Below, piece after piece: positions 25,428 through 56,606 of a stretch of DNA of 64,000 bases; position 1 is the stretch's first letter; the number at the start of each line of letters is the position of its first letter. The position numbers and the translations under genes were made by a program. The stretch lies in assembly GCA_965649765.1 (NCBI GenBank), contig OZ287757.1, positions 28,830,001 through 28,894,000 of the forward strand. Reading direction: 5' to 3'. The stretch comes from Bispira polyomma (Eukaryota). The notes beneath the pieces were generated by a model. It did not search any database and was not told the origin of the DNA. It saw only the letters and a program-made list of their open reading frames with translations.

Positions 25428-25443
25428 AATTTAAAATGTTTAT
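25428..25443 (+). repeat. Target-site duplication, copy 1 (AATTTAAAATGTTTAT)
   Basis: Exact reverse complement of 40753-40768; each copy directly abuts the 3' end of a PLE. Confidence 0.85.
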
Positions 25444-25491
25444 AGAGATAAAGTGTTATGTGTGAGAGAGGATTTGTTTCTCCAACAAAAT

Positions 25492-25557
25492 GCCTTATAT
25501 ATATCTTTTATTGTTGATATATATTTCGATAATCTTATGGATAATCTCATCAGAGGC
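25492..25557 (-). ncRNA. Type I hammerhead ribozyme (PLE copy 1)
   Basis: Minus strand: GCCT-CTGATGA-GATTATC(CATAA)GATTATC-GAAA-TATATATC(AACAATAAAA)GATATATA-TA-AGGC; intact core, AUA cleavage triplet. Confidence 0.88.
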
Positions 25558-26316
25558 TGATAAATGATTATAATTTTTCCTTGAAGTACTATAATTGACT
25601 CCGGTTGCCTCCAGCGGATCCAAGGCTTCCTCCGTTTGAGCCATGGGATCCTCCTTTGAGGTAATGTATTTAGAGGAGTCAGACCATTTTTTGACCATTT
25701 GGGATTAATAAGTAGAGTATTATGGTGTATATTCTATCAAAAATAAGCCCATGGGAATTGGTCTAATGAACATAATGAAGCAAAGGTGACAATGCGTTCA
25801 GGTTGTATATATGTTCACTGGTGGGGAGATTTATGGTTTCCCTGGTATGAATATTTATGGGGATTTCATACCGATAAATAGTATTAGGATTAAAATTTTT
25901 TGTGTTAATCAATGGGTGACATTGGTTTATGATCACCAAGAGGCCATGTTAGGTCTCAGAAGATTAGTTAGTGGGGTTTTTTATATGGAAGTAATAGATG
26001 TGAAATCGAATTTTTAATAAGATTCCAGCATCGATTACTATCTCATTCTCTGAAATTGGTATTTTCTAAATACCACAAGGAGGATTACTATTTGTGTAAT
26101 GCCAGGTGTTGATTATAAATTCTTATGATTTTATTACATCATTCAATATATATAATCATTTTGTATATAAGTGTATTAGACAAATATAAATATATATATG
26201 AATAAATACCCATAAATAACCTTAACTTTAATATTTTATGAATATTTTGCTAACTTATTAAATATTGTCCATTTAATATAAACAGTTTTTATCCGTTGAG
26301 TGATAAACTTAATTAA

Positions 26317-26613
26317 TATAGTTCCATATTAAGTTCATAGTGGTGGGGTTATGTCCCCACACACAGTTTCTAGATATTCCATGAGCTCAAAGCTGCATTT
26401 GGGTTGTACTATATTGCCCCATCTCTGTGGTGAGGGAGTGGCTAAGCGCATGGAAATTGCCGGATATAGTTCCATATTAAGTTCATAGTGGTGGGGTTAT
26501 GTCCCCACACACAGTTTCTAGATATTCCATGAGCTCAAAGCTGCATTTGGGTTGTACTATATTGCCCCATCTCTGTGGTGAGGGAGTGGCTAAGTGCATG
26601 GAAATTGCCGGAG
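26317..26613. repeat. ~146-bp tandem duplication of the 3' end of the zinc-finger ORF
   Basis: ATATAGTTCCATATTAAGTTCATAGTGG...GGAAATTGCCGGA occurs at ~26317-26464 and again at ~26464-26613. Confidence 0.9.
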
Positions 26614-26893
26614 AGTCCGAAACAAACTGGTCCAAGAAATTCTCTGCGGTTGTGGGAGAATTGTTGGGATGTGTTTGTTCTTCACTATCCACACAGTCCA
26701 AAATATTTTGAAAATCATTATGGGCTGGGTGTTTCACAGAGATATGTCTCTTGAGATAGTCTGGTCTTCTAAAACCCAATTTACAAAACCGACAATAGAT
26801 TCTAAATTCCTGATGTGAACTTCTAATGTGTCTTCTAAGATTACATTTCTTAGAATAATTTTTGTGACAGATTGCACAAGTAAACCACATCAT
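26483..26893 (-). CDS. 136-aa protein with two C2H2 zinc fingers and an acidic Ser/Pro tail, internal to the PLE unit
   Basis: F-x-CAIC-HKNYSKKCNLRRHIRSSH and Y-CRFC-KLGFRRPDYLKRHISVKH; uninterrupted ORF, co-oriented with RT, lying between the RT 3' UTR and the pLTR. Confidence 0.85.
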   Translation of the reverse strand: MMWFTCAICHKNYSKKCNLRRHIRSSHQEFRIYCRFCKLGFRRPDYLKRHISVKHPAHNDFQNILDCVDSEEQTHPNNSPTTAENFLDQFVSDSPAISMHLATPSPQRWGNIVQPKCSFELMEYLETVCGDITPPL

Positions 26894-26999
26894 AAAACTG
26901 TAGTATATTTATAATAATATAGATAACCAATTGTTGAGTGGTTACTACTATACACATAAACTAAGATATGTTTAAAATCAGCCAATTTGTTTATGTTGG

Positions 27000-27120
27000 A
27001 GATGGTGACCAGGTAACTTAGGTGAGTTAAGTGGTGATAATTACATCATAATAGACTGATCGTAGTGTGACGTCATAACGTTGCCTTACGTCAGTGGTGA
27101 CATTGTGATGTCACATTCCC
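27000..27120 (-). promoter_or_regulatory. Putative internal promoter upstream of the zinc-finger ORF (CRE cluster plus X-box-like site)
   Basis: TGACGTCA (~27068), TTACGTCA (~27086) and TGATGTCA (~27106) within 50 bp; GTGACCAGGTAAC at ~27006. Confidence 0.45.
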
Positions 27121-27217
27121 TCATTGTGGGTGTTTTGCCCATGTTTGAGTTGTCCAATATAGGTAAATATAAAAATAGGTACACCTGGGTTATGGGTGTG
27201 ATAAGAGGGCATACAAC

Positions 27218-28225
27218 TCATACAAACATATTGATGCCTGCTGGGTGTATGGTTGGGAAGGCCCAGATTAAATATAATTCCTGGCGTTTACGCCTTTCAG
27301 TGGAATCTGGTGTGTTATCCATTCCCATCCACTGGAAAATGCTGAACTCCATGTGTTTCACAGAATGATTGTTCTGTGTGAAGTGCCTGGAGACAGGAGT
27401 GGATTTGTTTGTCTGGAAGTTTTGAACACTTCTGTAGTGTTCATACATTCTTTGTCTGAATGGTCTTTTTGTTTCTCCAATATATTGGAGGCCACATTTT
27501 GCACAATTTATAATGTAAATTACATTATTTAGTTCACAAGTAATTTTGTGTTTAAGTGGGAGGTTTAAACATTTGAAGACTTTCTTGGTGTTGTAACTGG
27601 TGATATTTTCCAGTTTTTTAATCCTAGGACAATAGGTACATTTGCCCAATCTTGTGCAGACTGGGATATGTGTTTGGGTTTTGGTTGTGTCCTGTTTTGG
27701 TGGGAATAGGACTTTAGCTGAGGTGAGCTTGTCCTTTAAATTGTGTAGTTTCCTATATCCAATTAGTGGTTTTGACTGGAAGATTTTACTTAGTTCTTCA
27801 GTATTTTGGATTATATTCCAATTGCCATTAATTAGTGGATTAACGTGGGGGTTGAAGGGGTTAAACTGTGTGACCATGACTGGTGTGTCAATGGGTTTTT
27901 GTGTGTGCACTGCATTGAGTAGCTCACTTTGTGAGAATTTGTTTGCCCTTTTGTAATGTTTTTTGAGGGAACTAAATGGGTATCCTCTTTTTAAGTAGTA
28001 CCCTGTTAGTTTGTGAGCGTTTTCTTGGAAGTCACTGTCTAACGTACAAATTCTCCTGAGGCGTAAATATTGCCCATAAGGACTTTTATCCAGGACACTT
28101 CTTGGGTGAGCTGAATTAAATGCAAGATACATGTGGGTATCTGTGGGTTTATTGTAGAGAGTTGTGATCAGTTCTCTAGCGGGACTAAACTTGACAGTTG
28201 TGTCAAGAAAGTTAATTTTGTAATG
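27218..28225 (-). pseudogene. PLE RT thumb/linker plus GIY-YIG endonuclease, 5'-truncated
   Basis: Near-identical to the C-terminal ~335 aa of ORF 40817-43237. Confidence 0.92.
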
Positions 28226-31200
28226 ATGGAAAGGATAAATTATAAAGACATTCTTAGGAATATAAAGGAGGAGTCCAAAACAGCTCCTCCTGGTATTCTC
28301 CATAAGGGCAGAACCATGGACAACCTCATTGGACACACTGTCATTAATCTGTCAGATGTGACCCTGAGTGATGACCAGGTCTCGGCACTACAAAAAGGCC
28401 TAACTTTTTGCCCCACACCTGGTCCACCTAACAAATCACAGATTTGGTTAGACTTCAAAGACTTCCATAGAAGACTTTGTCTTAAGTACCACTTCTTTCA
28501 AGACAACAACCTCCTAAATCACTTGGACCAAAGTGAAAACGAGCTAGTTGAATTCTTGGCCTCTAACCTAGATGAATGTGAAAACCCATATAAGGATATT
28601 CATAACCAATTTGTTGATAAAAGCAATTGGAAACCACCAAGGACACACCAGTCACTGGAGATTTTCCATAGAATATTAAAGAAAGTAATTGCCATGTGAC
28701 AGGTTCTAGGGAGATCTGGGGGTTCATTAATACACACACCACCACAGCCTGCCGGCTTTTCATACAGACTCTCAACTGGCTTATGTGTATGTAAAATGTT
28801 AAAGTTTGAAAAGTTCAGTTTCTTGGTGAGATCTAGCTGACTTTGTTTTATTTTAATTTTTTTTTCTTTAGTTCTACTGTTGAGCGTAAAACTTCAGTAT
28901 TATTACTTTCCACTTTAAACATTGTATTTTTTTTTATATGTCATATCGTATATCATTAAACTAAGCAACATATCTATTAGTTTGCAAGTAGCAGGTGCTT
29001 CAGAGACCACATTTATCAAAGGTCTTTAACTCATTTTTAAGCTTAATAAACTAAAGTAACTAACATAATATATAAATAAGAGTTCCTTTTAAATTAAAGA
29101 TAACCTAGAGGGCTGGATTTTGAGTTTTCTCCATCGCTGCCCCTATGTTATGCAATAGACTCCCAGTTGAGCTTAGATCACTAGAAAACTAGAAAACACT
29201 TTCTGGTTAGAAGAAAATTTAAAACATATCTCTTTATATCCACACTCCATCCATACTGCATCTACACCTCACATGCTTTCTTACGACCTGGTTAAGATTT
29301 TTTGATTGGTTCGATTGGTTGATTGATTCTACTGTTGCACTTTAGAAGATGCCTCGCTTCAATAAGGTCCGTTAAAAATGCAAAATACAAGACAATTTGT
29401 CGCTTGTGATTTTAATTGCGCTTACAGCCAGGAGCTCAAATATGCAATTATCACTGTACATTTGTATGTAGAAATATACGCAGCAGATCTGCAATGCAGA
29501 AAATCATGAAGAAATACCATATAATGCTTTCCTCCACCAAATGAACTGCTTGTCAATATATCAAAAAAAGTTGTTGAAAAAAGACGTTAAGGTCCATTCA
29601 TACAGGATGCATCTGGATCGTAGATACGTATAATTTTGACACAAATAAAACAGGGTAAACATTGACACAGAATCCAGGTCCGACGATCCGGTCCATATAA
29701 TATTTACACGGATTTGATTTATAATTTTTGATGGATCCATATCCTTACCAATCACCTGCAAAGTAGCTTGAAAATTTCACATGATTTGGGCCGCATTTTC
29801 TGTCCAGTGTAAGAAGGAAACAGATAATATCTGTTTTAGGATAATTATACGGATCCTGATCCGGATGCGGTCCAGTGGGTTTCTACCTTTAAACTGAAAA
29901 GTAATCAAAGTGTATACAAAGATACACCACGGTATATTTTAAGCAATTTGTTGAGATAAAGTTGAACACCTTTGATAAACATCATTCCTGGCATGTTTAA
30001 CCTCATTGGCAATTACAGGGCAATTTATTAGGCCCAGTAAATGTCCATTGTATATTGTGATAAATAGAAAACTTATAATTGTTCGTATATCAAATTGATT
30101 TCAAGGCAAATATACTGCTTTTCAAGCTTACGTGACAGGTTAAAACACTATGTTAGTTCTGTGATGGTCACAGTTACTTTAATAATAAAACTGTTAAAAA
30201 GCAATGTATTGTGTATATCTTATATTTTAGTTTCAAAGCAATTACGTTGAATTACTTTGAAATGCTGATCAGACAAGTTATAAACATATTCATGTAGTGT
30301 GATAGAAATATTATGTATGCTATGCATACATGTGCATTATGCATAGCACATCATTATATCAAGAACTTTTTTTGTTGTCCATTGGTAAAAAAATGAACCA
30401 ATAAACTGTCATTTCTGTAATCTAGATAAATATGAATTTGTTTTATTATAGTTGTGTTTGCAAGTTAGTCCAATACATTTGAATAGTTTGTAGCAAAATT
30501 TAACCCATTTGACCGGCAATAAAACTATCGCCGGTAACTGAAGGAAGAATTTTTTCAGTAATAAGGTTACAGATAGCTGGAGTTACTAAAACATACTCCA
30601 CAGAATACTTCCAGAATTTAATAATGGCCTTGCAGATAACAGGAGATTCTGCTGTACTATTTCCTGTTGCGAGGACCTGAAGGAAAATAGAATAATATTT
30701 TGTAAGTACCAACAGGTTAAGGGAGTTATGGTATGTTCGACAACCCTTGTGAGTTTGGTAAACACCACTAGTGAGCTCGTAAACACCAACAGTAAACGTT
30801 CTTGAGTTTGTAAACACACAAGGCGTGAATTTCTCTATATCCACATGGTGTTAATATTTATAAAGTAAAAATGTGACACATATAAATAAAAAGTTCAATC
30901 TGTTTTATTTAAATAAATTATAAGGGATAATTATGTTAATAATATTTGATATAAATAATAAAATAAATAATAAAACCAAGCATATCTCTTTAACCATATT
31001 TACTGGCAGCCATTTTTCTAGTATTCTCCGTCAGGGTCACAGATTGGGAGTACTCTGGGAGCTTTCTACTCACAAGCTAAGTTTACCATATATGTGGCCG
31101 GTCTTGGCGTTATTCACACTTGGTTAGTTGGTGAGCACGACTCGTAAGTGGCTTAAGAACGGGTCATAAGAAACACTGTTGGCAACATCAGGCTGACAAC

Positions 31201-31409
31201 ATCAGGCTCAAAAGGATTAAGCAAGGATTGGTGTATAGACTAAGTCATCCATATTATTATTATTATAAATTTTTAACATGCTTTATTGATGCTAGGCATC
31301 TTCTAAACCACAACAGCATAATCATTGGTCCAATCATTAAGTCCATGGACATTGCAAAGTCGTAAGGAAGGAAGTGGGAGCATGCACGAGGGAAACTAAG
31401 GTGGGTAGG

Positions 31410-31600
31410 CAAGATTAAAAAGATAGGTTTTAAGCTTTTTCCTAAAACCGATAAGTGTGTCAACTGATCTGAGGTCGACTGGGAGACTGTTCCATAACTG
31501 TGGAGCTGCAGTAGAGAATGCGCTGAAAACCGCCTTTCTGATTGGTCTGACCGAAGTGACGGAGAGTCTCTTGCCTCTCTTGCGGTTATAATGCTAAAGT
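31410..31600 (-). mobile_element. L2/CR1-clade LINE 3' fragment (mirrored at ~53680-53865, +)
   Basis: Translates to SAFSTAAPQLWNSLPVDLRSVDTLIGFRKKLKTYLF, a typical ORF2 C-terminus. Similar remnants at ~29110-29235 and ~20520-20650. Confidence 0.7.
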
Positions 31601-32749
31601 TTGTCTGACAAACATTTTACAAAACTTGAAGGCAATTGTTCAAACATTTATGTCCAACCATCAAACTTTAAAGTTGTAAACATTCACTAAGTTGATGGCA
31701 AGTTTGGTTATATACCATATAAAGGAATGCTATAACAAAGTTATTCAACAAGCTAATTCATAGGAAAAAAACAACAACATTTGACTGAAGAAATCTAATT
31801 TATTAGACCAAAATTGTATATGACATCAAAAATAACAAACTTTTTAGGAAAATGTCACAATGTAAAAGGTCTGAACTAGTTTTTAACACATTAATTCTAT
31901 ATTCACAATGAAATTGGCACTATCACAGAAAAAAAGAGAACATATTCAGTTTACTTGCCTGGGTACTTACATGTAACATCACAAGGTCAGAGAAACGGGT
32001 AAAATGTACAAATATATACTTAGATAAATTATAAAAAATGTATATAAAAAAGGGAGAAAAATGATATAAGGAACTTAATCTATTAATGAAAAAAGTAAAG
32101 AAAAAGAAAGAAAATAACATACATTAATGCATCAAGTGACATTCAGAACATGTAAACATTCCAATACCTAAAATTTCAACACCAATAGTGCACTAGTAGT
32201 TGCACTATCTTATAGGTATGTAACTGAGTATGGAATACATTGGTTGTTAGAACAGAGGGCAACTATAAACAATTCATCAGATTTTGCACAATTACAAGAG
32301 ATGCAACTTGAATGAACTTGTATGTGTTGCTGTTACACAATTACATAACATTCAATTCCTACGAACTTGTATAATTTACTGTTACACATTTACAACATTC
32401 AACTCCAATGAACGTGCATAATTAGTTGTTACAAAATCTGAATGTTCAATATCAAAGAATGCATAATTAGTTGTCACATTCTAAAACTTCAACTAAAAAA
32501 CAACTCCACACTGCTAACATATATACATTATAAATCCATATGCATTGCACCTCCTAATCTTTTAGAGATCGGGATAATTAGTCAACTGCCGTGTATACTA
32601 TTGTCAGTACACATGCAATATTTGTGCACATGCAGTTTTTGTAGTTTTTTTATGGCCAACTAGTAAGCCATCAGTAAAAATGCACTAGAGATGTTTTATT
32701 GCATTTTTTTACTTCGGGGGTGGGGGGGGGGGGTGGGGGGGGGGGGCAT

Positions 32750-33150
32750 AAGTCACTTTTATACATGTGCATGATGTGTTTATATATTTTGTGGGTGCTC
32801 CTGCACTAGAACCCACATTGAGGCATCACACACACAGGTATCATCAGGGTTTATAAAAGTCAATTACTCGGGATAAAAGTCACTTTTATACATGTGCATG
32901 ATTGGTGTTTATATATTTTGTGGGTGCTCCTGCACTAGAGCCCACATTGAAGCATCACACACACAGGAATCATCAGGGTTTATAAAAGTCAATTACTCGG
33001 GATAATAGTCACTTTTACACATGTGCATGATGTGTTTATATGTTTTGGGGATGCTCCTGCACTAGAACCCACATTGAAGCAACACACACACAGGTATCAT
33101 CAGGGTTTATAAAGTCACTTACTCGGTTACTCAGCATAAAAGTCACTTTT
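32750..33150. repeat. ~123-bp minisatellite (about 3 units; about 4 units in the mirror at ~52000-52530)
   Basis: Repeating AAGTCACTTTTATACATGTGCATGA...GCACTAGAACCCACATTGAAGCATCACACACACAGG. Confidence 0.85.
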
Positions 33151-35458
33151 AGTCCATTCCGGGTACATTGTTCATAGGCAGAACAATGGAGTCTCTCACT
33201 GCACACATAAAATGATGCTCTCTTCTACAATTAACCTTGCTGCACCTCAAAGAATCTCTTGTAGTAAGGCACATTATCTATGTGTGCATTTATAGGTATG
33301 TCTCTTGTTGGTAGATGACTAAAGAAGATCTTATTATAAGTCACTAATAATATACTCTTTTCATATAGTCTGGTATCATCAGCATACAAAACTCCCTCAC
33401 TCGCATACAGACAGTATTTTATCATATATCTAATTGACTCCGTAGATGTATACCAGGTATATCATTCCATATATGAGTTACCACATTCTTTCATCTGAAC
33501 ACATATGTTGGTTCTAGGTAGATATATGTACATGTATATCTTTTCTGTGTTCTATGTACAGTACTTACAAAGTACCTAGATACATGCTCATTTATGTGTA
33601 AATCTGAATATAGATTTAGATTATTTCTTTACGTCACACAAGACAATAGTAATTTTACAGGCTTGTTGGTTGTCACTCATTTAACTCATGGCAATATTAC
33701 CTCAGCTGTGACTTTGGACAATTTTTTGTTTGATATTTAGTTGAGGATTTTTTTTTACTATCTGCAAAGCAACCCATAAAGCCTGTTCTCCATATTGCTG
33801 GTACACATGTATATTTCTCGGATTTATCCATCTGTACTTGTGTAACTGCTTGCAGTACCCAAATGGAGATCACGGTAACTCATGGAGTGTCGAACTTCTG
33901 AGTTCAGTCATCAACACGACCTTTATATTGCACATATCCCAGAAACTTCAAGCAATTTGTTTGTTTGGCCTTATATTCTTGGGTTTCGTTTTTTTTTAGT
34001 TTTTTTTTAATTTTTCTTTTTTTTTTTTGCAAAAATATATATTTTTTTTGCTGTGGTTGTTTAAAGCTGTGTAGTTGTCTTTATATTTAGTCGTTTTCTA
34101 TTCTTTCTTCTTTTGGTTGCGTTTCCTTAACTACTGTTTTTCTTTCTGAAAAGAAACAAATCATAAACATTAGGGTATCATTATGTATATATATATATTG
34201 TCCTGACAGAAACTCCAAATTGACAAGATTTGAAATTCTGTCGACAGAAACTCCAATTGCAATCTCTGTCAACAGAATTTCAAATCTTGTCAGATATATT
34301 TAACATAAATTCCAATTGGAATCTCTGACAGAAATTCAAATCTTCAGTAACATTAAAATAAATTAGTAATAATAATAATATTTATTTATCCAGGATAATA
34401 TTATACAAATCACTGAAGTTAAACAACTTATGGTATGACATTCCTTGCTTTTAAAAAAAGACATAGTAAAGGGTAAAAAAATAATAAGTTCGTGAAATAT
34501 GAATAACAGTTTTCTTTTTTGAAGTTGATCAAAGGTTATTTATGCATTCCAGAGTATTACAGTAGTACCTTAAAATGGCCATAATTGAGTTTTTGCAATT
34601 TACATAACAGAATGACCCTTTTTTAATGCTTTGGAAGCTGAAATGTATCATTCAAAGTTGTGTGAATATGGATCAGAAAACAGAATTTTAATGCAGACTT
34701 TTATAACCTCTTAGATATACATACAAGTAAAGTAAAGCAAACTAAAAAATTTACATTATTGACATTATTAATTTTGGTTTATATCTTTTACCATGTATTA
34801 TGTATTAAATTTTTGTTAAATGTTCATTATAATAACCTTGATCTTAATAAACATGTTTTTATTCCTTGATGTATTTTACAAAGTTTAAATTTTATTAATA
34901 ATGTTTGCATTTCTGTCGACAGAATTTCAAATCTTGTTGACAGGATTTGAAATTCTGTTGACAGAAACTCCAACTGGAACTTCTGTCAAAATTATTGACA
35001 GTATTTGAAATTCTGTCGACAGAAATTCAAATCATGATTAAACATGCACATGGTGAAGAATAAACTAGGATTGGAGTTTCTATCGACAGAGATTCCAATT
35101 GGAGTTTCTGTCGACAGAATTTCAAATCTTGTCAGATTGGAGTTTCTGTCACGACATATATATATATATATATGTATACGTTAAATGAGTCAGTAGGATT
35201 AATTTTACTCATATTCTTAAACAAGAGCACAATAAATGTTATTATCAAATAATACAATACATTAAAAGTGCATATTTTAGCTGGAAGAAATTTTCACTAT
35301 TTTATAATTTTTTAATAAATTTGCTGGAAATAATTTATAATTCAATAGATTATATAATAGAATTAGTCATGTTAAAAATATTAATTATTACACCTTTTTG
35401 GGGGATAAAAGAAATGCCCACTGCCACGAGACAACAAAAAACGACAGTAAAATGAATA

Positions 35459-35621
35459 CAGTAGAACCTCTATTACCCCAACTTCTATTTTCCGAATATT
35501 CAATTTTATGAACTTTTATGAATTTTGTTTCCCTATTGTTTAATACAGGAATGTCTCTTTTATTTTATGACCAAACATAATCATGCTCTCCAAACATGTT
35601 CAGATAATAGAGGTTCTACTG
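35459..35621. mobile_element. Tc1/mariner (pogo/Tigger-like) MITE
   Basis: TA-CAGTAGAACCTCTATT...AATAGAGGTTCTACTG-TA. Relatives at ~24044-24211, ~35895-36065, ~49556-49718, ~58463-58655 and ~58900-59235. Confidence 0.75.
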
Positions 35622-36430
35622 TATATTTACTTTTCTTTCAACAAGTCTAAATACAATGAACTTTCCTAAAGAAACAGGTGACAGTGTTTTATATGACCAA
35701 AAATTGTGACCCTCCTGTGATCAGATGACATCTGCGTAGCTTGATTTCTTATTGAAATATTATTTGATTAAATGGATTTACGGTAGAATACAATAAAGGA
35801 AATTAACATAAAAAAATGATCTCTTTTCAACAGTCTGTACCAGTTACTGTTATATACATGTATTTTGAACTCAGCTGAGCAAGAGTTAAAACTACAGTAG
35901 AACCTCAATTATAAAATTTTCTAAACACAATTTCATACTGCCAAATTTATAGTTTCCTATTGTTTAAAACTACATGTATTACATGTGTATCTATTTTATC
36001 AACCTTCTATTATCTAAACCAAATCTTAAGCTCCCAACATGTTTGGATAATAGAGATTCTTCTGTATTTGTTACAATGGTTGCCTGTTTATAACAACCCT
36101 GATGCTTTGATTGGTATAAATGTGAAAATCACACATATAAATTGCTCAAACTGAAATAAATGCATGAAAATTTGACATCACATGGCACATTATATTGATA
36201 CAACTGCTAAAGTCAAATCTAGCCCGAAAAAAGGTTTGATCGCTATGCGAAGTCGAAAGAACATTTTTTTGTTGTCCAAGTAAAAACTGATTGTAAATTT
36301 GGGCTAGTGAACAAGCAATTTATATCTAAGACTAAGTTCCAGACTAAGACCTTTAGTGAATAGTGAATAGGTTGGACTTCAATGGGTTTCCATTCTGTAC
36401 ATACATATAGATGACTTACTTGGGAGAGTA

Positions 36431-37941
36431 TTAATCAGAAGTGGCATCAGTCAGTATCACCGACTCTGACGTCGATGACACTGAGGCAGAAACCATGCTG
36501 GGTGGAAACAAGCTTTGGGCACCGATGAGTTCTCCCTTCCACCAGTTAGGAAAGTCTTTGTTGAGGACGTTGATGAGGTTTCCTTTAGTAAAGGTCAGGT
36601 CTCCCTCCTGTTCTCCCACAAAGTTACAATTGGCCACCACCTGCTCCACTGTGTGGTCAGAAAAGGGGGAAATATTTGTGTTTAACTTGTAAATATGTGG
36701 GCATAACGGGACTAAAATAGATGTAGTCCATGTCTTCTCAAGTATGATTTTTACTGTACCATCTACGATTTGCATTTACGGTTTGTTTCCTCTTTAGTAA
36801 TTATATGCAGTGGAACCCTATTTAGTCGAACCTGAAGTGACCATAAAAGATTCTTCTACTAACAGAATGTCTACTTCACAGGGTAAATTTTAATTACAAA
36901 TATAGAAATGGGACCTTGAAATAACTCCTACTTCACAGAGTAATTCCACTTATCAGAGTTCTACTTAAAGGGGGTTGACTGTATGTTAACTCGTAAATAT
37001 GTGGGCATAAAGGGAAACAAATATAATGTAGTCCATGTTTCGTCAAGTAGGATTATTTTTCTGCACCATGTAAATTTGCAATTGCAATTTGTTTCCTCTT
37101 TATAAATTACATTGTATATGCAATCGAATCTGAAGGGATCATAAAAATTTCTTCCACTCAATATGGTAATTTTTAATTAGAAATATAGCATCAAAACTTC
37201 TACTACATGTAATTCCTTTTGCGATTGCAATAAAAAATCTGTTCTTAAAGAAAAATTTTACAAAACGCACATAGAAATTGCACAGAATAATATCAAATTG
37301 TTATAATAAATAACATATATACTGGTACAGATATAAGCACACAGTAAGACAAGGCTAACCTTATTACTTGTATTTTTTCTTCTTCAATATAGACCTAATC
37401 ATTTTAGAAGTGACACATCTATGCTCACAAGTCAATTTCAATCCAGGGCAAACATTTTTCTGACTATATTGTCTATTAACTCAAAAGATATATCCCCATT
37501 TAATCATAACCTTTCATCTTAAAATAAGGGATTGAGATTCTAAGGGACAACCTAATTCATTGCTAGCAATGAAGTGGATTTAAAAGTCTTGAAATCTCAG
37601 TTAAAAATCGTATGGAGACCCGGTCTTGGTAGGGGGGGGGGTGTATCGGGAAAGTTGGCAGTAGGCATGCTGAAGGATGGTGATTTGCAAAGCAGAAAAC
37701 CTTGACCAACTACCCTGTTCTGATTTCCTCCACCAGTGAACTGTCCGTTGTGATAGGTGTTGAAAGTGACAATGCACAATAACTACATGCTACACTACAA
37801 AACATCTGTAACTAAAACAATTTGCAACAGAGTTAACAAAAATGCTAATTTAATATGAAATTTTAAAAACTACTTACCAGATCTAGCTGAGTTTGTGGTA
37901 AATAAGCTGACTGGAGTGGTGGTTCTGGCCTGTCCTGTTTC
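36431..37941 (-). pseudogene. SH3-domain gene fragment, left-arm copy (exons 37878-37941 and 36431-36648)
   Basis: Mirror of 47236-48746. Confidence 0.6.
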
Positions 37942-44175: not shown

Positions 44176-44240
44176 AATGACCCAGTAGATATAGAGATAA
44201 AGTGTTATGTGTGAGAGAGGATTTGTTTCTCCAACAAAAT

Positions 44241-44978: not shown

Positions 44979-47900
44979 TCAAGTTCAGCTGTGTACTTTA
45001 GGAGTAATTCACTGATGTATATCTGCAGAAAGTGGGGTGATGTGGGCTGGATTAAAACCAATCACATAGATGCATTGTCACCAGATGCAATTTTGGACCA
45101 ATCGCCTAATCCTGCATGTTTTATAATTTATGAAGCATGCTGGGTGCTGAAAATGGGGACCAAATTTTAATGTTCTTACCAAGCTGAGTGAAGCTTAGAC
45201 ACAGGCATGCTGTGAACCTATCATTAATGAGTTGTCCTCAAACATCCAATCGTTAGACTGATGCAGCCATGGATATTACATGTTGACTTACTAATAAAAC
45301 AGAGCTCCAGTATAGTATCATCAAAATAGACCATCAAACTGGAATGAGTGGCTGTGAACGGCAGTCTTAGAACATTTGTAAATATGGCCCAAAAGTGGTT
45401 GAGTTTGATTTTTATTTATTTGTTTTTCCCCTAATATGGGGAGGGGGGACCATTAGTGTACTTTAACCATAGACTTACACTGGTACAAAAGTCCACGCTG
45501 GTTCCTGGCTCTGGGCCTATTTTGTTGCCACTGGATTTGTGAGTTAACCGCCTTATATAGTTAGCAGGGAACCAACCGACGTTCCTCCTCTGACTTTTAG
45601 TCTCCTACAACGTTAATAAGAAACAAAACAAAAACACAAGACATATAAATATATATGGTAAGTATGATAACATAGAATGAAACGTCAATATTGAAGAGCA
45701 CCACCACATTACAAATTAAAGATAAACTAGAAATTGCTCCAACTCAGTGCAAGCCAACAGAAAGAATTTATTAAAGAAGCAAAAATGAAATGTATGTGTA
45801 TATTATCCGAGGAAGATTATGTAAACGTGTGAAATGTGTGTAGGTTTATAGTCCGATATCACCTCTATTGAAGTCTCAGCCGACTCTACAGTTTACACCC
45901 TCAGCCTGGGTTCTTCTACTTGTCGACCAATTGTTCAGTATCAGCTCCCTCAGGAAGCATACTAGCCGTGCTGCCATATACAACAGACAAAGACTAACAC
46001 CCATTAGCGGCCAGGTATATACCTGGGCAGAGAGGGACAACTATGTGTAAAGCACTTTATCCAACAGTAATCTCTTTAGGCCTACAGAGGATTGAACTGG
46101 GGCTCTGAGATTAATCAGATCCAAAGTCTGACACTCTAACCGCTAGGCCACAGAGAACATTTTATGATTAAATGTTTTTCTGTAAGTCTTATTTTTACCT
46201 TATTTGTGTCTACATCTGTAGCATGTTTTACCCTTGTCTGTTTTTTTGTGTGAATCTGTGGAGAAATAAAATAAACTGGAAATTATATCACAATTATATC
46301 ACAATTTTGATTTGAGCTATTTTCACTTGTACACTGAGACAGTAGAAATTAATCTATATGAATATTTAAATTTGCATTAATCCCCAAAAAATGACGGACA
46401 GTGTAAGTCTATGGTTAAAGTACACTAATGGTTCCCCCCCCTCCCCCACCAACGACACACATTTTTTATTGGTTGGTTACTTTGTGATAAGTTTCAACTC
46501 ACTTTTCCATTTTAACATTTGTCTACTTGTTAGGACTGAACTCTAATCATAAATCTTTCCCTTCTATTGGACTATTCTTTTGCATTCTGATTGGGATGTG
46601 TGCCACAGAGGCTGCCTGGTCATCGATTGTGGCGCTATAGAAGTAACAACATTAACATTTAGTATGGTACAACCTCTATTAGGGGAGCAAAAATTTGTTT
46701 TGATATTAGAAGATTCATATAATAAGAGAGAGGATTTGAATAAAAAGCAATAGGAAAATATATATTTGGGACAGTTGTAGTGAATTTCTACTCTGTCTTT
46801 CTAACTTATTTTAGCATGATTGGAACTTTTTGTGACACTAACTAACAGTGGGATTTTCAATTTACCTTTTTATCTAGCACCTTAGAATTTGATATAATCA
46901 AAAAATTTACATAATATTTAATATTGTACATCAGTTCGAATCTTCGCATATTCTTCTGTAGGATATTCTTTCAGTAATTAGAAAAATCTTAACATTGATT
47001 TAGAATCTGCCACATGATATTGATCCAATTAATTGGAATCTTACATAAATTAGAAAATAGAAGCTTACTTAAAGTAGCACTGAACCCAAAATTAGGAAAT
47101 GTTATATAATTATCTACTGGTCACATTTTGTCAAATAACTAAAATTTTAATCTGCTACAGTGTATTTTACATAAACTATTAGTGCACACATTTCACGTCA
47201 CATTTAAATTATCCATGTGTCGTGTATCCATACAGGAAACAGGACAGGCCAGAACCACCACTCCAGTCAGCTTATTTACCACAAACTCAGCTAGATCTGG
47301 TAAGTAGTTTTTAAAATTTCATATTAAATTAGCATTTTTGTTAACTCTGTTGCAAATTGTTTTAGTTACAGATGTTTTGTAGTGTAGCATGTAGTTATTG
47401 TGCATTGTCACTTTCAACACCTATCACAACGGACAGTTCACTGGTGGAGGAAATCAGAACAGGGTAGTTGGTCAAGGTTTTCTGCTTTGCAAATCACCAT
47501 CCTTCAGCATGCCTACTGCCAACTTTCCCGATACACCCCCCCCCCTACCAAGACCGGGTCTCCATACGATTTTTAACTGAGATTTCAAGACTTTTAAATC
47601 CACTTCATTGCTAGCAATGAATTAGGTTGTCCCTTAGAATCTCAATCCCTTATTTTAAGATGAAAGGTTATGATTAAATGGGGATATATCTTTTGAGTTA
47701 ATAGACAATATAGTCAGAAAAATGTTTGCCCTGGATTGAAATTGACTTGTGAGCATAGATGTGTCACTTCTAAAATGATTAGGTCTATATTGAAGAAGAA
47801 AAAATACAAGTAATAAGGTTAGCCTTGTCTTACTGTGTGCTTATATCTGTACCAGTATATATGTTATTTATTATAACAATTTGATATTATTCTGTGCAAT

Positions 47901-50900
47901 TTCTATGTGCGTTTTGTAAAATTTTTCTTTAAGAACAGATTTTTTATTGCAATCGCAAAAGGAATTACATGTAGTAGAAGTTTTGATGCTATATTTCTAA
48001 TTAAAAATTACCATATTGAGTGGAAGAAATTTTTATGATCCCTTCAGATTCGATTGCATATACAATGTAATTTATAAAGAGGAAACAAATTGCAATTGCA
48101 AATTTACATGGTGCAGAAAAATAATCCTACTTGACGAAACATGGACTACATTATATTTGTTTCCCTTTATGCCCACATATTTACGAGTTAACATACAGTC
48201 AACCCCCTTTAAGTAGAACTCTGATAAGTGGAATTACTCTGTGAAGTAGGAGTTATTTCAAGGTCCCATTTCTATATTTGTAATTAAAATTTACCCTGTG
48301 AAGTAGACATTCTGTTAGTAGAAGAATCTTTTATGGTCACTTCAGGTTCGACTAAATAGGGTTCCACTGCATATAATTACTAAAGAGGAAACAAACCGTA
48401 AATGCAAATCGTAGATGGTACAGTAAAAATCATACTTGAGAAGACATGGACTACATCTATTTTAGTCCCGTTATGCCCACATATTTACAAGTTAAACACA
48501 AATATTTCCCCCTTTTCTGACCACACAGTGGAGCAGGTGGTGGCCAATTGTAACTTTGTGGGAGAACAGGAGGGAGACCTGACCTTTACTAAAGGAAACC
48601 TCATCAACGTCCTCAACAAAGACTGTCCTAACTGGTGGAAGGGAGAACTCATCGGTGCCCAAAGCTTGTTTCCACCCAGCATGGTTTCTGCCTCAGTGTC
48701 ATCGACGTCAGAGTCGGTGATACTGACTGATGCCACTTCTGATTAATACTCTCCCAAGTAAGTCATCTATATGTATGTACAGAATGGAAACCCATTGAAG
48801 TCCAACCTATTCACTATTCACTAAAGGTCTTAGTCTGGAACTTAGTCTTAGATATAAATTGCTTGTTCACTAGCCCAAATTTACAATCAGTTTTTACTTG
48901 GACAACAAAAAAATGTTCTTTCGACTTCGCATAGCGATCAAACCTTTTTTCGGGCTAGATTTGACTTTAGCAGTTGTATCAATATAATGTGCCATGTGAT
49001 GTCAAATTTTCATGCATTTATTTCAGTTTGAGCAATTTATATGTGTGATTTTCACATTTATACCAATCAAAGCATCAGGGTTGTTATAAACAGGCAACCA
49101 TTGTAACAAATACAGAAGAATCTCTATTATCCAAACATGTTGGGAGCTTAAGATTTGGTTTAGATAATAGAAGGTTGATAAAATAGATACACATGTAATA
49201 CATGTAGTTTTAAACAATAGGAAACTATAAATTTGGCAGTATGAAATTGTGTTTAGAAAATTTTATAATTGAGGTTCTACTGTAGTTTTAACTCTTGCTC
49301 AGCTGAGTTCAAAATACATGTATATAACAGTAATTGGTACAGACTGTTGAAAAGAGATCATTTTTTTATGTTAATTTCCTTTATTGTATTCTACCGTAAA
49401 TCCATTTAATCAAATAATATTTCAATAAGAAATCAAGCTACGCAGATGTCATCTGATCACAGGAGGGTCACAATTTTTGGTCATATAAAACACTGTCACC
49501 TGTTTCTTTAGGAAAGTTCATTGTATTTAGACTTGTTGAAAGAAAAGTAAATATACAGTAGAACCTCTATTATCTGAACATGTTTGGAGAGCATGATTAT
49601 GTTTGGTCATAAAATAAAAGAGACATTCCTGTATTAAACAATAGGGAAACAAAATTCATAAAAGTTCATAAAATTGAATATTCGGAAAATAGAAGTTGGG
49701 GTAATAGAGGTTCTACTGTATTCATTTTACTGTCGTTTTTTGTTGTCTCGTGGCAGTGGGCATTTCTTTTATCCCCCAAAAAGGTGTAATAATTAATATT
49801 TTTAACATGACTAATTCTATTATATAATCTATTGAATTATAAATTATTTCCAGCAAATTTATTAAAAAATTATAAAATAGTGAAAATTTCTTCCAGCTAA
49901 AATATGCACTTTTAATGTATTGTATTATTTGATAATAACATTTATTGTGCTCTTGTTTAAGAATATGAGTAAAATTAATCCTACTGACTCATTTAATGTA
50001 TACATATATATATATATATGTCGTGACAGAAACTCCAATCTGACAAGATTTGAAATTCTGTCGACAGAAACTCCAATCCTAGTTTATTCTTCACCATGTG
50101 CATGTTTAATCATGATTTGAATTTCTGTCGACAGAATTTCAAATACTGTCAATAATTTTGACAGAAGTTCCAGTTGGAGTTTCTGTCAACAGAATTTCAA
50201 ATCCTGTCAACAAGATTTGAAATTCTGTCGACAGAAATGCAAACATTATTAATAAAATTTAAACTTTGTAAAATACATCAAGGAATAAAAACATGTTTAT
50301 TAAGATCAAGGTTATTATAATGAACATTTAACAAAATTTAATACATAATACATGGTAAAAGATATAAACCAAAATTAATAATGTCAATAATGTAAATTTT
50401 TTAGTTTGCTTTACTTTACTTGTATGTATATCTAAGAGGTTATAAAAGTCTGCATTAAAATTCTGTTTTCTGATCCATATTCACACAACTTTGAATGATA
50501 CATTTCAGCTTCCAAAGCATTAAAAAAGGGTCATTCTGTTATGTAAATTGCAAAAACTCAATTATGGCCATTTTAAGGTACTACTGTAATACTCTGGAAT
50601 GCATAAATAACCTTTGATCAACTTCAAAAAAGAAAACTGTTATTCATATTTCGCGAACTTATTATTTTTTTACCCTTTACTATGTCTTTTTTTAAAAGCA
50701 AGGAATGTCATACCATAAGTTGTTTAACTTCAGTGATTTGTATAATATTATCCTGGATAAATAAATATTATTATTATTATTACTAATTTATTTTAATGTT
50801 ACTGAAGATTTGAATTTCTGTCAGAGATTCCAATTGGGATTTATGTTAAATATATCTGACAAGATTTGAAATTCTGTTGACAGAGATTGCAATTGGAGTT

Positions 50901-53900
50901 TCTGTCGACAGAATTTCAAATCTTGTCAATTTGGAGTTTCTGTCACGACAATATATATATATACATAATGATACCCTAATGTTTATGATTTGTTTCTTTT
51001 CAGAAAGAAAAACAGTAGTTAAGGAAACGCAACCAAAAGAAGAAAGAATAGAAAACGACTAAATATAAAGACAACTACACAGCTTTAAACAACCACAGCA
51101 AAAAAAATATATATTTTTGCAAAAAAAAAAAAAGAAAAATTAAAAAAAAACTAAAAAAAAACGAAACCCAAGAATATAAGGCCAAACAAACAAATTGCTT
51201 GAAGTTTCTGGGATATGTGCAATATAAAGGTCGTGTTGATGACTGAACTCAGAAGTTCGACACTCCATGAGTTACCGTGATCTCCATTTGGGTACTGCAA
51301 GCAGTTACACAAGTACAGATGGATAAATCCGAGAAATATACATGTGTACCAGCAATATGGAGAACAGGCTTTATGGGTTGCTTTGCAGATAGTAAAAAAA
51401 AATCCTCAACTAAATATCAAACAAAAAATTGTCCAAAGTCACAGCTGAGGTAATATTGCCATGAGTTAAATGAGTGACTACCAACAAGCCTGTAAAATTA
51501 CTATTGTCTTGTGTGACGTAAAGAAATAATCTAAATCTATATTCAGATTTACACATAAATGAGCATGTATCTAGGTACTTTGTAAGTACTGTACATAGAA
51601 CACAGAAAAGATATACATGTACATATATCTACCTAGAACCAACATATGTGTTCAGATGAAAGAATGTGGTAACTCATATATGGAATAATATACCTGGTAT
51701 ACATCTACGGAGTCAATTAGATATATGATAAAATACTGTCTGTATGCGAGTGAGGGAGTTTTGTATGCTGATGATACCAGACTATATGAAAAGAGTATAT
51801 TATTAGTGACTTATAATAAGATCTTCTTTAGTCATCTACCAACAAGAGACATACCTATAAATGCACACATAGATAATGTGCCTTACTACAAGAGATTCTT
51901 TGAGGTGCAGCAAGGTTAATTGTAGAAGAGAGCATCATTTTATGTGTGTAGTGAGAGACTCCATTGTTCTGCCTATGAACAATGTACCCGGAATGGACTA
52001 AAAGTGACTTTTATGCTGAGTAACCGAGTAAGTGACTTTATAAACCCTGATGATACCTGTGTGTGTGTTGCTTCAATGTGGGTTCTAGTGCAGGAGCATC
52101 CCCAAAACATATAAACACATCATGCACATGTGTAAAAGTGACTATTATCCCGAGTAATTGACTTTTATAAACCCTGATGATTCCTGTGTGTGTGATGCTT
52201 CAATGTGGGCTCTAGTGCAGGAGCACCCACAAAATATATAAACACCAATCATGCACATGTATAAAAGTGACTTTTATCCCGAGTAATTGACTTTTATAAA
52301 CCCTGATGATACCTGTGTGTGTGATGCCTCAATGTGGGTTCTAGTGCAGGAGCACCCACAAAATATATAAACACATCATGCACATGTGTAAAAGTGACTT
52401 TTATCCTGAGTAATTGACTTTATAAACCCTGATGATACATGTGTGTGTGATAGTTGAATGTGGGTTCTAGTGCAGGAGCATCCACAAAATATATACACCA
52501 ATCATGCACATGTGTTAAGGTGACTTATGCCCCCGCCCCCCCCCCCCCCCCACCCCCGAAGTAAAAAAATGCAATAAAACATCTCTAGTGCATTTTTACT
52601 GATGGCTTACTAGTTGGCCATAAAAAACTATAAAAACTGCATGTGCACAAATATTGCATGTGTACTGACAATAGTATACACGGCAGTTGACTAATTATCC
52701 CGATCTCTAAAAGATTAGGAGGTGCAATGCATATGGATTTATAATGTATATATGTTAGCAGTGTGGAGTTGTTTTTTAGTTGAAGTTTTAGAATGTGACA
52801 ACTAATTATGCATTCTTTGATATTGAACATTCAGATTTTGTAACAACTAATTATGCACGTTCATTGGAGTTGAATGTTGTAAATGTGTAACAGTAAATTA
52901 TACAAGTTCGTAGGAATTGAATGTTATGTAATTGTGTAACAGCAACACATACAAGTTCATTCAAGTTGCATCTCTTGTAATTGTGCAAAATCTGATGAAT
53001 TGTTTATAGTTGCACTCTGTTCTAACAACCAATGTATTCCATACTCAGTTACATACCTATAAGATAGTGCAACTACTAGTGCACTATTGGTGTTGAAATT
53101 TTAGGTATTGGAATGTTTACATGTTCTGAATGTCACTTGATGCATTAATGTATGTTATTTTCTTTCTTTTTCTTTACTTTTTTCATTAATAGGTTAAGTT
53201 CCTTATATCATTTTTCTCCCTTTTTTATATACATTTTTTATAATTTATCTAAGTATATATTTGTACATTTTACCCCTGTTTCTCTGACCTTGTGATGTTA
53301 CATGTAAGTACCCAGGCAAGTAAACTGAATATGTTCTCTTTTTTTCTGTGATAGTGCCAATTTCATTGTGAATATAGAATTAATGTGTTAAAAACTAGTT
53401 CAGACCTTTTACATTGTGATATTTTCCTAAAAAGTTTGTTATTTTTGATGTCATATACAATTTTGGTCTAATAAATTAGATTTCTTCAGTCAAATGTTGT
53501 TGTTTTTTTCCTATGAATTAGCTTGTTGAATAACTTTGTTATACCATTCCTTTATATGGTATATAACCAAACTTGCCATCAACTTAGTGAATGTTTACAA
53601 CTTTAAAGTTTGATGGTTGGACATAAATGTTTGAACAATTGCCTTCAAGTTTTGTAAAATGTTTGTCAGACAAACTTTAGCATTATAACCGCAAGAGAGG
53701 CAAGAGACTCTCCGTCACTTCGGTCAGACCAATCAGAAAGGCGGGTTTCAGCGCATTCTCTACTGCAGCTCCACAGTTATGGAACAGTCTCCCAGTCGAC
53801 CTCAGATCAGTTGACACACTTATCGGTTTTAGGAAAAAGCTTAAAACCTATCTTTTTAATCTTGCCTACCCACCTTAGTTTCCCTCGTGCATGCTCCCAC

Positions 53901-56606
53901 TTCCTTCCTTACGACTTTGCAATGTCCATGGACTTAATGATTGGACCAATGATTATGCTGTTGTGGTTTAGAAGATGCCTAGCATCAATAAAGCATGTTA
54001 AAAATTTATAATAATAATAATATGGATGACTTAGTCTATACACCAATCCTTGCTTAATCCTTTTGAGCCTGATGTTGTCAGCCTGATGTTGCCAACAGTG
54101 TTTCTTATGACCCGTTCTTAAGCCACTTACGAGTCGTGCTCACCAACTAACCAAGTGTGAATAACGCCAAGACCGGCCACATATATGGTAAACTTAGCTT
54201 GTGAGTAGAAAGCTCCCAGAGTACTCCCAATCTGTGACCCTGACGGAGAATACTAGAAAAATGGCTGCCAGTAAATATGGTTAAAGAGATATGCTTGGTT
54301 TTATTATTTATTTTATTATTTATATCAAATATTATTAACATAATTATCCCTTATAATTTATTTAAATAAAACAGGTTGAACTTTTTATTTATATGTGTCA
54401 CATTTTTACTTTATAAATATTAACACCATGTGGATATAGAGAAATTCACGCCTTGTGTGTTTACAAACTCAAGAACGTTTACTGTTGGTGTTTACGAGCT
54501 CACTAGTGGTGTTTACCAAACTCACAAGGGTTGTCGAACATACCATAACTCCCTTAACCTGTTGGTACTTACAAAATATTATTCTATTTTCCTTCAGGTC
54601 CTCGCAACAGGAAATAGTACAGCAGAATCTCCTGTTATCTGCAAGGCCATTATTAAATTCTGGAAGTATTCTGTGGAGTATGTTTTAGTAACTCCAGCTA
54701 TCTGTAACCTTATTACTGAAAAAATTCTTCCTTCAGTTACCGGCGATAGTTTTATTACCGGTCAAATGGGTTAAATTTTGCTACAAACTATTCAAATGTA
54801 TTGGACTAACTTGCAAACACAACTATAATAAAACAAATTCATATTTATCTAGATTACAGAAATGACAGTTTATTGGTTCATTTTTTTACCAATGTACAAC
54901 AAAAAAAGTTCTTGATATAATGATGTGCTATGCGTAATGCACATGTATGCATAGCATACATAATATTTCTATCACACTACATGAATATGTTTATAACTTG
55001 TCTGATCAGCATTTCAAAGTAATTCAACGTAATTGCTTTGAAACTAAAATATAAGATATACACAATACATTGCTTTTTAACAGTTTTATTATTAAAGTAA
55101 CTGTGACCATCACAGAACTAACATAGTGTTTTAACCTGTCACGTAAGCTTGAAAAGCAGTATATTTGCCTTGAAATCAATTTGATATACGAACAATTATA
55201 AGTTTTCTATTTATCACAATATACAATGGACATTTACTGGGCCTAATAAATTGCCCTGTAATTGCCAATGAGGTTAAACATGCCAGGAATGATGTTTATC
55301 AAAGGTGTTCAACTTTATCTCAACAAATTGCTTAAAATATACCGTGGTGTATCTTTGTATACACTTTGATTACTTTTCAGTTTAAAGGTAGAAACCCACT
55401 GGACCGCATCCGGATCAGGATCCGTATAATTATCCTAAAACAGATATTATCTGTTTCCTTCTTACACTGGACAGAAAATGCGGCCCAAATCATGTGAAAT
55501 TTTCAAGCTACTTTGCAGGTGATTGGTAAGGCTATGGATCCGTCAAAAATTATAAATCAAATCCGTGTAAATATTATATGGACCGGATCGTCGGACCTGG
55601 ATTCTGTGTCAATGTTTACCCTGTTTTATTTGTGTCAAAATTATACGTATCTACGATCCAGATGCATCCTGTATGAATGGACCTTAACGTCTTTTTTCAA
55701 CAACTTTTTTTGATATATTGACAAGCAGTTCATTTGGTGGAGGAAAGCATTATATGGTATTTCTTCATGATTTTCTGCATTGCAGATCTGCTGCGTATAT
55801 TTCTACATACAAATGTACAGTGATAATTGCATATTTGAGCTCCTGGCTGTAAGCGCAATTAAAATCACAAGCGACAAATTGTCTTGTATTTTGCATTTTT
55901 AACGGACCTTATTGAAACGAGGCATCTTCTAAAGTGCAACAGTAGAATCAATCAACCAATCGAACCAATCAAAAAATCTTAACCAGGTCGTAAGGAAGCA
56001 TGTGAGGTGTAGATGCAGTATGGATGGAGTGTGGATATAAAGAGATATGTTTTAAATTTTCTTCTAACCAGAAAGTGTTTTCTAGTTTTCTAGTGATCTA
56101 AGCTCAACTGGGAGTCTATTGCATAACATAGGGGCAGCGATGGAGAAAACTCAAAATCCAGCCCTCTAGGTTATCTTTAATTTAAAAGGAACTCTTATTT
56201 ATATATTATGTTAGTTACTTTAGTTTATTAAGCTTAAAAATGAGTTAAAGACCTTTGATAAATGTGGTCTCTGAAGCACCTGCTACTTGCAAACTAATAG
56301 ATATGTTGCTTAGTTTAATGATATACGATATGACATATGAAAAAAAATACAATGTTTAAAGTGGAAAGTAATAATACTGAAGTTTTACGCTCAACAGTAG
56401 AACTAAAGAAAAAAAAAAAAAATTAAAATAAAACAAAGTCAGCTAGATCTCACCAAGAAACTGAACTTTTCAAACTTTAACATTTTACATACACATAAGC
56501 CAGTTGAGAGTCTGTATGAAAAGCCGGCAGGCTGTGGTGGTGTGTGTATTAATGAACCCCCAGATCTCCCTAGAACCTGTCACATGGCAATTACTTTCTT
56601 TAATAT
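44979..56606 (+). repeat. Right arm of ~11.5-kb inverted duplication (continuous with the downstream host DNA)
   Basis: Reverse complement of 28673-40201. Confidence 0.97.
47236..48746 (+). pseudogene. SH3-domain gene fragment (intersectin SH3E-like, degenerate), exons 47236-47299 and 48529-48757
   Basis: Phase-1 join gives ...ARSVEQVVANCNFVGEQEGDLTFTKGNLINVLNKDCPNWWKGELIGAQSLFPPSMV; TAA 11 nt before a GTAAGT donor; ALYDY and PxxY motifs degenerate. Confidence 0.6.

What the first reader, a model, noticed from the sequence alone, without database searches (positions are those of the whole stretch)
25428..56606. Two crossed, twin-primed Penelope insertions built an 11.5-kb giant palindrome, with the target-site duplication left in inverted orientation
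Seen: all four junctions of the rearrangement are PLE cDNA ends. The 3' end of PLE1 follows AATTTAAAATGTTTAT (25428-25443) and the 3' end of PLE2 follows its exact reverse complement (40753-40768), so both sides of one staggered cut were extended. The 5'-inverted piece of PLE1 joins the outer end of the left arm (28672/28673). The 5'-inverted piece of PLE2 joins, through a reiterated A/T run, the inner end of the right arm (44978/44979). Inferred ancestral allele: ...25443 + revcomp(40202-40752) + right arm + 56607... Inference: four target-primed RT events on two RNAs, each RNA primed once at site 1 (16-nt stagger) and once at site 2 (nicks 11.5 kb apart, perhaps on sister chromatids), giving an inversion with a large inverted duplication. 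Twin priming is established for L1 and Penelope is known at Drosophila inversion breakpoints, but I do not know a nucleotide-level PLE case like this.
Basis: partly seen in the sequence, partly recalled or inferred. Interest (0 to 1): 0.93.

Follow-up and report, generated by a model that had tools for sequence, protein, structure and literature searches.

The report
Penelope-bridged inversion with giant inverted duplication
A Penelope-type jumping gene sits at both breakpoints of a recent rearrangement that flipped a short stretch and copied 11.6 kb back-to-front, an outcome so far described for human LINE-1 in tumours and here seen base by base in an inherited animal genome.

Summary
The structure is real. 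Two 11.5-11.6-kb inverted arms (0.37% substitutions, 10 indels) are bounded by pieces of a young Penelope-like element (RT + GIY-YIG, hammerhead), with a 16-nt target-site duplication (TSD) in inverted orientation. The predicted empty allele exists to the base in a paralogue on another contig, and the other broken adjacency is intact in nine paralogues. Both site-1 ends are this family's two fixed priming sites, and 16 nt fits its 8-18-nt TSDs. The two site-2 ends are non-canonical: one shows reiterated A-run synthesis, the other has no microhomology. All four pieces share one source haplotype, favouring one coupled event with crossed cDNA joins (0.52). Four public runs, apparently from other individuals, did not show the junctions laid. 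Crossed L1 bridges with displaced TSDs and staggered-break inversions are known; I found no PLE case. The scan had noted this family's two-armed insertions elsewhere, not this rearrangement.

The parts
25428..25443 (+). Target-site duplication, copy 1 (16 nt)
   Evidence: Single copy in the empty paralogue L032 1501-1516; family TSDs 8-18 nt, median 14
25444..28225 (-). PLE arm P1: starts at the family's fixed site S2, reads through pLTR, zinc-finger region, site S1 and the 3' kilobase of the RT-EN ORF
25487..25563 (-). Hammerhead motif in P1 (same as 44236-44312)
26316..26612 (.). 148-bp tandem duplication, with about 430 bp of full-length copies missing, in P1's C2H2 zinc-finger ORF (ORF piece 26483-26893, -)
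28223..28672 (+). Inverted 450-bp piece H' (= element 43231-42782, start of the RT ORF); joins P1 by a 3-nt overlap (ATG) and the left arm with no microhomology
28673..40201 (-). Left palindrome arm (D'), 11,529 bp
40202..40752 (-). Inverted single-copy segment C', 551 bp
40753..40768 (-). Target-site duplication, copy 2, inverted
40769..44875 (-). PLE arm P2: starts at the family's fixed site S1; holds RT-EN ORF, upstream ORF and pLTR
40817..43231 (-). Intact RT + C-terminal GIY-YIG ORF (804 aa from the ATG at 43231)
43372..44175 (-). Upstream 267-aa ORF, no Pfam match
44236..44312 (-). Minimal hammerhead ribozyme motif (CUGAUGA...GAAA core, three stems); no Rfam hit
44877..44978 (+). Inverted 84-bp piece Q2' (= 44724-44641) plus reiterated run: read from the arm, A5-TT-A17 where all other copies have TT-A4 to A6
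44979..56606 (+). Right palindrome arm (D), 11,628 bp, continuous with 56607+ as in nine paralogues

Best explanation
One coupled, PLE-driven germline event. (1) The element's endonuclease cut site 1 with a 16-nt stagger, and both 3' ends primed reverse transcription at the family's two fixed RNA sites, giving P1 and P2 [well supported]. (2) Two further free 3' ends, on opposite strands at the two ends of the 11.6-kb segment D, were extended on element template at non-canonical positions, giving H (450 nt) and Q2 (84 nt after reiterative A-run synthesis) [inferred; good for Q2, weak for H; whether the PLE endonuclease made these nicks is unknown]. (3) The cDNA ends joined crosswise (P1 with H, P2 with Q2) instead of P1 with P2 [inferred]. 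(4) Displacement fill-in across D, or replication through the nicks so that a sister chromatid gave the second D, left D as a giant inverted 'TSD' and C inverted [inferred; the two routes cannot be told apart]. Which RNA molecule made which piece is not determinable.
For: Empty allele exact. P1 and P2 start at the sites where 30 independent primed ends of the family start. 11 of 17 fully visible copies have direct TSDs of 8-18 nt. Both inner joins (3-nt overlap; 1-nt insert) look like the joins in ordinary two-armed copies. The A17 run is private and sits at the primer end, where slippage is easy. P1, P2, H' and Q2' agree at all six polymorphic sites they cover, a combination in none of the sampled copies at 98% identity or more. 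L012 is a family precedent for a canonical long arm plus a short non-canonical arm without TSD. A purified PLE cuts and extends both strands and needs no primer-RNA homology (PMC11167929).
Against: Junction 28672/3 has no microhomology and a non-canonical start. Q2 lies inside P2's span, so it is not a textbook upstream twin-primed piece. PLE pairs differ by 0.7-0.8% but the arms by 0.33-0.37% (Fisher p 0.007-0.014), which a single age does not predict unless the arms were partly converted or RT/source errors add. The target-motif test had no power. No read across a junction was seen. One case only; no second one found.
Confidence: 0.52

Rival explanations
1. Two PLE events, then ectopic recombination. 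First an ordinary 5,242-bp two-armed insertion with a direct 16-nt TSD; separately a PLE-bridged tandem duplication of D; then a crossover between their inverted 450-bp shared sequence H flipped the DNA between them and inverted the TSD.
For: Flipping 28673-42781 in silico gives exactly these two structures, with continuous element sequence across the old junction. Inversions by ectopic recombination between TE copies are established in Drosophila (PMC6278893; displaced TSDs as their mark is from my own knowledge). Insertion intermediates recombine through homology (PMC13526784). An older insertion and younger duplication would explain the twofold gap between PLE-pair and arm divergence.
Against: The second insertion would have no canonical primed end, unlike any sampled copy whose ends were visible. 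It needs the same rare source haplotype twice and a breakpoint 551 bp from the first insertion. It still needs an 11.6-kb duplication.
Confidence: 0.22
2. Only two or three RT primings. P1 annealed by ATG to P2's cDNA (the family's normal join), copied 450 nt as second strand, was released and end-joined to a replication-derived break at the far end of D. P2's end was repaired onto the near end of D, by RT priming or by polymerase-theta-like templated synthesis.
For: Both short pieces lie inside P2's span. The P1/H' join is of the usual family type. Junction 28672/3 is blunt. L1 cDNA ends captured by pre-existing breaks, and local inversions and inverted duplications at L1-induced breaks, are described (10.1101/2024.08.27.596794, 10.1101/2024.12.14.628481).
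Against: No microhomology for fold-back priming at 44876/7. A5 to A17 slippage is hard after 80 nt of anchored duplex. No private allele is shared by H and H', though few were expected.
Confidence: 0.18
3. Assembly artefact (fold-back read or merged haplotypes).
For: No contig of four public runs was listed across a junction; the region is a multi-copy repeat.
Against: The arms differ by about 37-42 substitutions and 10 indels, private to both sides. Four novel junctions with family-typical features cannot come from merging by homology. The runs lack P1's private alleles, so they are probably other individuals.
Confidence: 0.04

Closest known systems
L1-mediated reciprocal inversions by synchronous insertions (Zumalave et al., bioRxiv 10.1101/2024.08.27.596794)
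   Same: Retroelement bridges at both breakpoints, orientation change inside the bridge, TSD copies split between breakpoints (18 and 419 bp in their example), cDNA ends joined in trans.
   Different: PLE not L1; inherited not somatic; both canonical primed ends at one site; second duplication 11.6 kb; inverted unique segment only 551 bp, so the product is a palindrome.
Inversions, inverted duplications and foldbacks at L1-induced breaks (10.1101/2024.12.14.628481; PMC13526784)
   Same: Local inversion or inverted duplication at a TPRT site with a TSD-like duplication between the two ends.
   Different: There the duplication is explained by hairpin priming on 2-bp homology; here both outer ends carry element sequence and no fold-back homology is present.
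Staggered-break inversions with inverted duplications (Ranz et al. 2007, PMC1885836)
   Same: Identical topology: inversion with inverted duplicates of both breakpoint regions; isochromatid and chromatid routes indistinguishable.
   Different: Their duplicates are 46 bp to about 1.9 kb and no cutting agent was identified; here one is 11.6 kb and the cut ends are marked by PLE cDNA.
TE ectopic-recombination inversions (Galileo, DAIBAM; PMC6278893)
   Same: TE copies at both breakpoints; an inverted homology (450 bp) is available.
   Different: Simple ectopic recombination does not duplicate 11.6 kb; a prior PLE-bridged tandem duplication is needed.
Canonical EN+ Penelope-like elements with inverted pLTR (PMC3846280; PMC11167929)
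   Same: RT + C-terminal GIY-YIG, pLTR, hammerhead, tandem arrays, head-to-head arms inside one TSD, fixed internal initiation sites.
   Different: Two fixed sites far apart on the unit, extra upstream ORF and zinc-finger ORF; here the two arms are separated by a rearrangement.

Membership tests
EN+ Penelope-like element | Single ORF with RT and C-terminal GIY-YIG | tested here: met
   RVT_1 at 273-476 and GIY-YIG at 705-777, both above cut-off; many full-length relatives with the same domains
EN+ Penelope-like element | pLTR / partial-tandem organisation | tested here: met
   683-bp segment at both ends of the unit; 5.43-kb tandem array at C2:59.17-59.20 Mb
EN+ Penelope-like element | Hammerhead ribozyme in the pLTR | tested here: met
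   Core motif and stems at 44236-44312 by inspection and fold, z -2.6; no Rfam hit; cleavage not tested
EN+ Penelope-like element | Head-to-head arms inside a short TSD, fixed initiation sites | tested here: met
   8 two-armed copies with direct TSD; 30 independent ends at two sites
EN+ Penelope-like element | RT phylogeny (clade within PLEs) | not tested
   No named references among the hits; no tree built
Retrotransposon-mediated reciprocal inversion (L1 type) | Element bridges at both breakpoints with TSD copies split and inverted | tested here: met
Retrotransposon-mediated reciprocal inversion (L1 type) | Endonuclease motif at the second site | tested here: inconclusive
   Profile from 19 family ends had no discriminating power in leave-one-out
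Retrotransposon-mediated reciprocal inversion (L1 type) | Synchrony: recombination after insertion excluded | tested here: inconclusive
   Shared source haplotype favours it; the 450-bp inverted homology allows a later flip
Classical twin priming on one RNA | Inverted piece drawn from RNA upstream of where the first cDNA stops | tested here: not met
   Met for H (957 nt upstream of P1's end), not for Q2, which lies within P2's span; a 3' pLTR copy or tandem RNA would be needed
Staggered-break inversion (Ranz type) | Inverted duplicates of both breakpoint regions, single copy in the ancestral state | tested here: met
   16-mer and D single and in order in the C14 paralogue

The most novel reading that the evidence does not exclude
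A PLE dimer complex nicked four positions in one germline event, primed all four ends (one by telomerase-like reiterative synthesis), and crossed the cDNAs, so that an 11.6-kb segment became a target-site duplication. PLEs would then be a direct, recurrent cause of staggered-break inversions and gene-sized palindromes in animal genomes.
Probability: 0.25. Interest if true: 0.8.

Novelty: new variant of a known kind. Interest (0 to 1): 0.58.

Why it matters
It gives in vivo, base-level support that PLE enzymes cut and extend both strands, so far shown in vitro for one element. It extends retrotransposition-mediated inversion and duplication from somatic L1 to an inherited genome and to a different class of retroelement. 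It names a candidate agent for inversions with inverted duplications, whose cause was left open in Drosophila. It makes a test cheap: look for TSD-less PLE arms whose partner TSD lies inverted kilobases away (6 of 17 fully visible copies here lack a TSD). Limits: one case, no gene found in the arms, mechanism not unique.

Tried and rejected
Only 1.5 kb of D could therefore be polarised. Public runs X1-X4 (contigs only) on 24900-29300 showed intact element and arm continuations, no listed junction-spanning piece, and none of P1's private alleles; uninformative for the source individual. A nick-site profile had no power. Flanks of three TSD-less copies (L012, L015, L002) showed no near-identical duplicate nearby, but two are repeats and only 40 candidates are scored. 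Fold-back self-priming for Q2 rejected: no microhomology. Origin of the second arm from the C14 paralogue rejected: both arms share 16 alleles against C14 in 1.5 kb. Source polymorphism for the A17 run rejected. Paper searches found no PLE case; most subscription journals are not in the library. Rfam missed the hammerhead.
Full report
Observation. Self-alignment shows one large inverted repeat, 28673-40201 against 44979-56606. The arms differ by 42 substitutions (37 outside a minisatellite) and 10 indels in 11,494 columns, 0.33-0.37%. Element sequence lies outside the left arm and between the arms. The ORF at 40817-43237(-) has RT and C-terminal GIY-YIG domains, and a hammerhead motif lies at 44236-44312. 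The 16-mer at 25428-25443 and its reverse complement at 40753-40768 are each unique in the window.

Ancestral allele. The window lies in a large dispersed repeat with copies on C2, C8, C11 (five), C13 and C14. The C14 copy reads flank A, one 16-mer, C, then D, with the predicted junction letters (L032). The D/E adjacency is intact in nine other places. The H'/D' junction occurs once in the genome. In the 1.5 kb of D that could be compared, both arms share 16 alleles against C14 and carry 5 and 6 private changes. The duplication is therefore local and younger than the split from C14. This is a paralogue, not the orthologous allele.

The family. The element is young and abundant: 163 exact hits of one 22-mer, a 5.43-kb tandem array on C2, and many copies at 98-99%. 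In 29 fetched copies, primed ends fall at two fixed sites: just after the RT-EN stop (40769) and at the end of the pLTR (about 44190 = 25444); 30 independent ends. Eleven of 17 copies with both ends visible have a direct TSD of 8-18 nt; eight of these are two arms head to head. P1 and P2 start at these two sites. Site 1 is thus an ordinary double-primed cut whose two arms failed to join each other. The sample is biased to long copies. A purified PLE cleaves and extends both strands, is predicted to be a dimer, and initiates at fixed internal RNA sites without homology to the DNA (PMC11167929). Inverted-pLTR inserts inside one TSD are typical of PLEs (PMC3846280).

Site 2. Both short pieces have the polarity of cDNA grown from a 3' end of D. 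At 44979 the arm end shares 2 nt (GA) with the template and is followed by A5, TT, A17, where every other copy has TT and four to six A. Reiteration at the primer end fits initiation of synthesis from the arm. It fits poorly with fold-back copying, for which there is also no microhomology at 44876/7. At 28672/3 there is no microhomology. Both starts (44641, 42782) are non-canonical; among nine two-armed copies with both ends visible only L012 has such an end, and it has no TSD. A target profile could not test whether the endonuclease nicked site 2. H lies 957 nt upstream of P1's stop, as twin priming predicts. Q2 lies inside P2's span, which needs the 3' pLTR copy or a tandem RNA. P1 and P2 overlap by 1 kb, which needs two RNAs or a tandem RNA.

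One event or two. P1, P2, H' and Q2' agree at all six polymorphic sites they cover, in a combination absent from sampled copies of 98% identity or more; all other differences are private, at 0.2-0.4% per piece, as in other young copies. This favours one source at one time. However, H and H' are 450-bp inverted repeats. Flipping the DNA between them gives a normal 5,242-bp two-armed insert in a direct 16-nt TSD, followed by a tandem duplication of D with a PLE bridge. The two states are interconvertible, so sequence alone cannot say which came first. PLE pairs are about twice as diverged as the arms (p 0.007-0.014). This fits an older insertion, but the innermost 1.5 kb of the arms is as diverged as the PLE pairs and a 1.9-kb stretch has no substitution, so partial arm-to-arm conversion is also possible. 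It remains unexplained.

Reality. The arms are too different for a fold-back read, and four new junctions with family-typical features cannot arise by merging haplotypes. Reads did not settle it. Four runs, kept as contigs, show the intact element and arm continuations at 28223-28225 and 28672/3 and lack P1's private alleles. They look like other individuals without this allele, and contigs cannot show absence.

Comparison with what is known. Reciprocal inversions with two L1 bridges, crossed cDNAs and split TSDs of 18 and 419 bp are described in tumours, as is capture of twin-primed cDNA ends by pre-existing breaks (10.1101/2024.08.27.596794). So are inversions, inverted duplications and foldbacks at L1-induced breaks (10.1101/2024.12.14.628481) and recombination between insertion intermediates (PMC13526784). 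The topology is that of staggered-break inversions, whose duplicates reached about 1.9 kb (PMC1885836). TE ectopic recombination is the standard rival (PMC6278893). My searches found no nucleotide-level PLE case, within a library that lacks most subscription journals.

Verdict. Real, and well anchored by an exact empty allele. It works like an L1-mediated inversion with split TSDs; the element is a canonical EN+ PLE by the features tested. New are the class of element, the inherited setting and the 11.6-kb size of the second duplication. One coupled event with crossed joins 0.52; two events plus ectopic flip 0.22; fewer primings plus break repair 0.18; artefact 0.04.

Noticed in passing
window about 18700-64000; paralogues on G000 C2:54.38-54.40 Mb, C8:1.30-1.33 Mb, C11 (4.07-4.11, 5.87-5.91, 14.64-14.68, 15.69-15.75 Mb), C13:27.2 Mb, C14:21.83-21.85 Mb: The host DNA is a 45-kb-plus repeat in about ten copies at 94-99% identity. 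Several copies hold internal tandem arrays of a 5.7-kb unit. Its nature (segmental duplication or giant mobile element) is unresolved.
   Followed up: partly
G000:C11:15.69-15.75 Mb: Two copies of the same host repeat face each other in inverted orientation about 15 kb apart: a second large palindrome. Not checked for PLE ends.
   Followed up: no
G000:C2:54.389-54.398 Mb: This paralogue has its own inversion and deletions within D, with a breakpoint at window 25373, 55 bp from the TSD.
   Followed up: no
L012 5250-5374: PLE copy ending in a short hairpin-like inverted piece repeated twice (65-bp unit), non-canonical end, no TSD.
   Followed up: partly
window 26316-26893: P1's C2H2 zinc-finger ORF lacks about 430 bp of full-length copies and has a 148-bp tandem duplication; not seen in the other copies fetched.
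   Followed up: partly
family copies, window equivalent 44230-44305: Many inner arm ends cluster around the hammerhead (44246, 44255 x2, 44273 x2, 44291 x3, 44305), suggesting RNA 5' ends or RT stalls there.
   Followed up: no
window 13050-18900: A-rich ORFs (715 aa at 13710-15857) with a weak RT-like Atlas hit (0.88) and a 1-kb segment repeated widely, often in pairs 7-8 kb apart; other scan notes call it a tyrosine-recombinase retrotransposon.
   Followed up: partly
window 59257-59904 (-): 215-aa ORF with a weak cyclic-nucleotide-binding match, below the Pfam cut-off; possibly an exon of a channel-like gene carried by the host repeat.
   Followed up: partly
window 8260-10866: Tandem triplication of a 898-bp unit at 98-99% identity.
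   Followed up: no
window 46726-48625: 1.9 kb without a substitution between the arms, against 12 in the first 1.75 kb: possible arm-to-arm gene conversion.
   Followed up: partly
G000:C2:59.174-59.198 Mb; C2:44.92 and 44.99 Mb: A PLE tandem array of at least four 5.43-kb units; and two near-identical insertions with the same flanks 65 kb apart (segmental duplicate).
   Followed up: no
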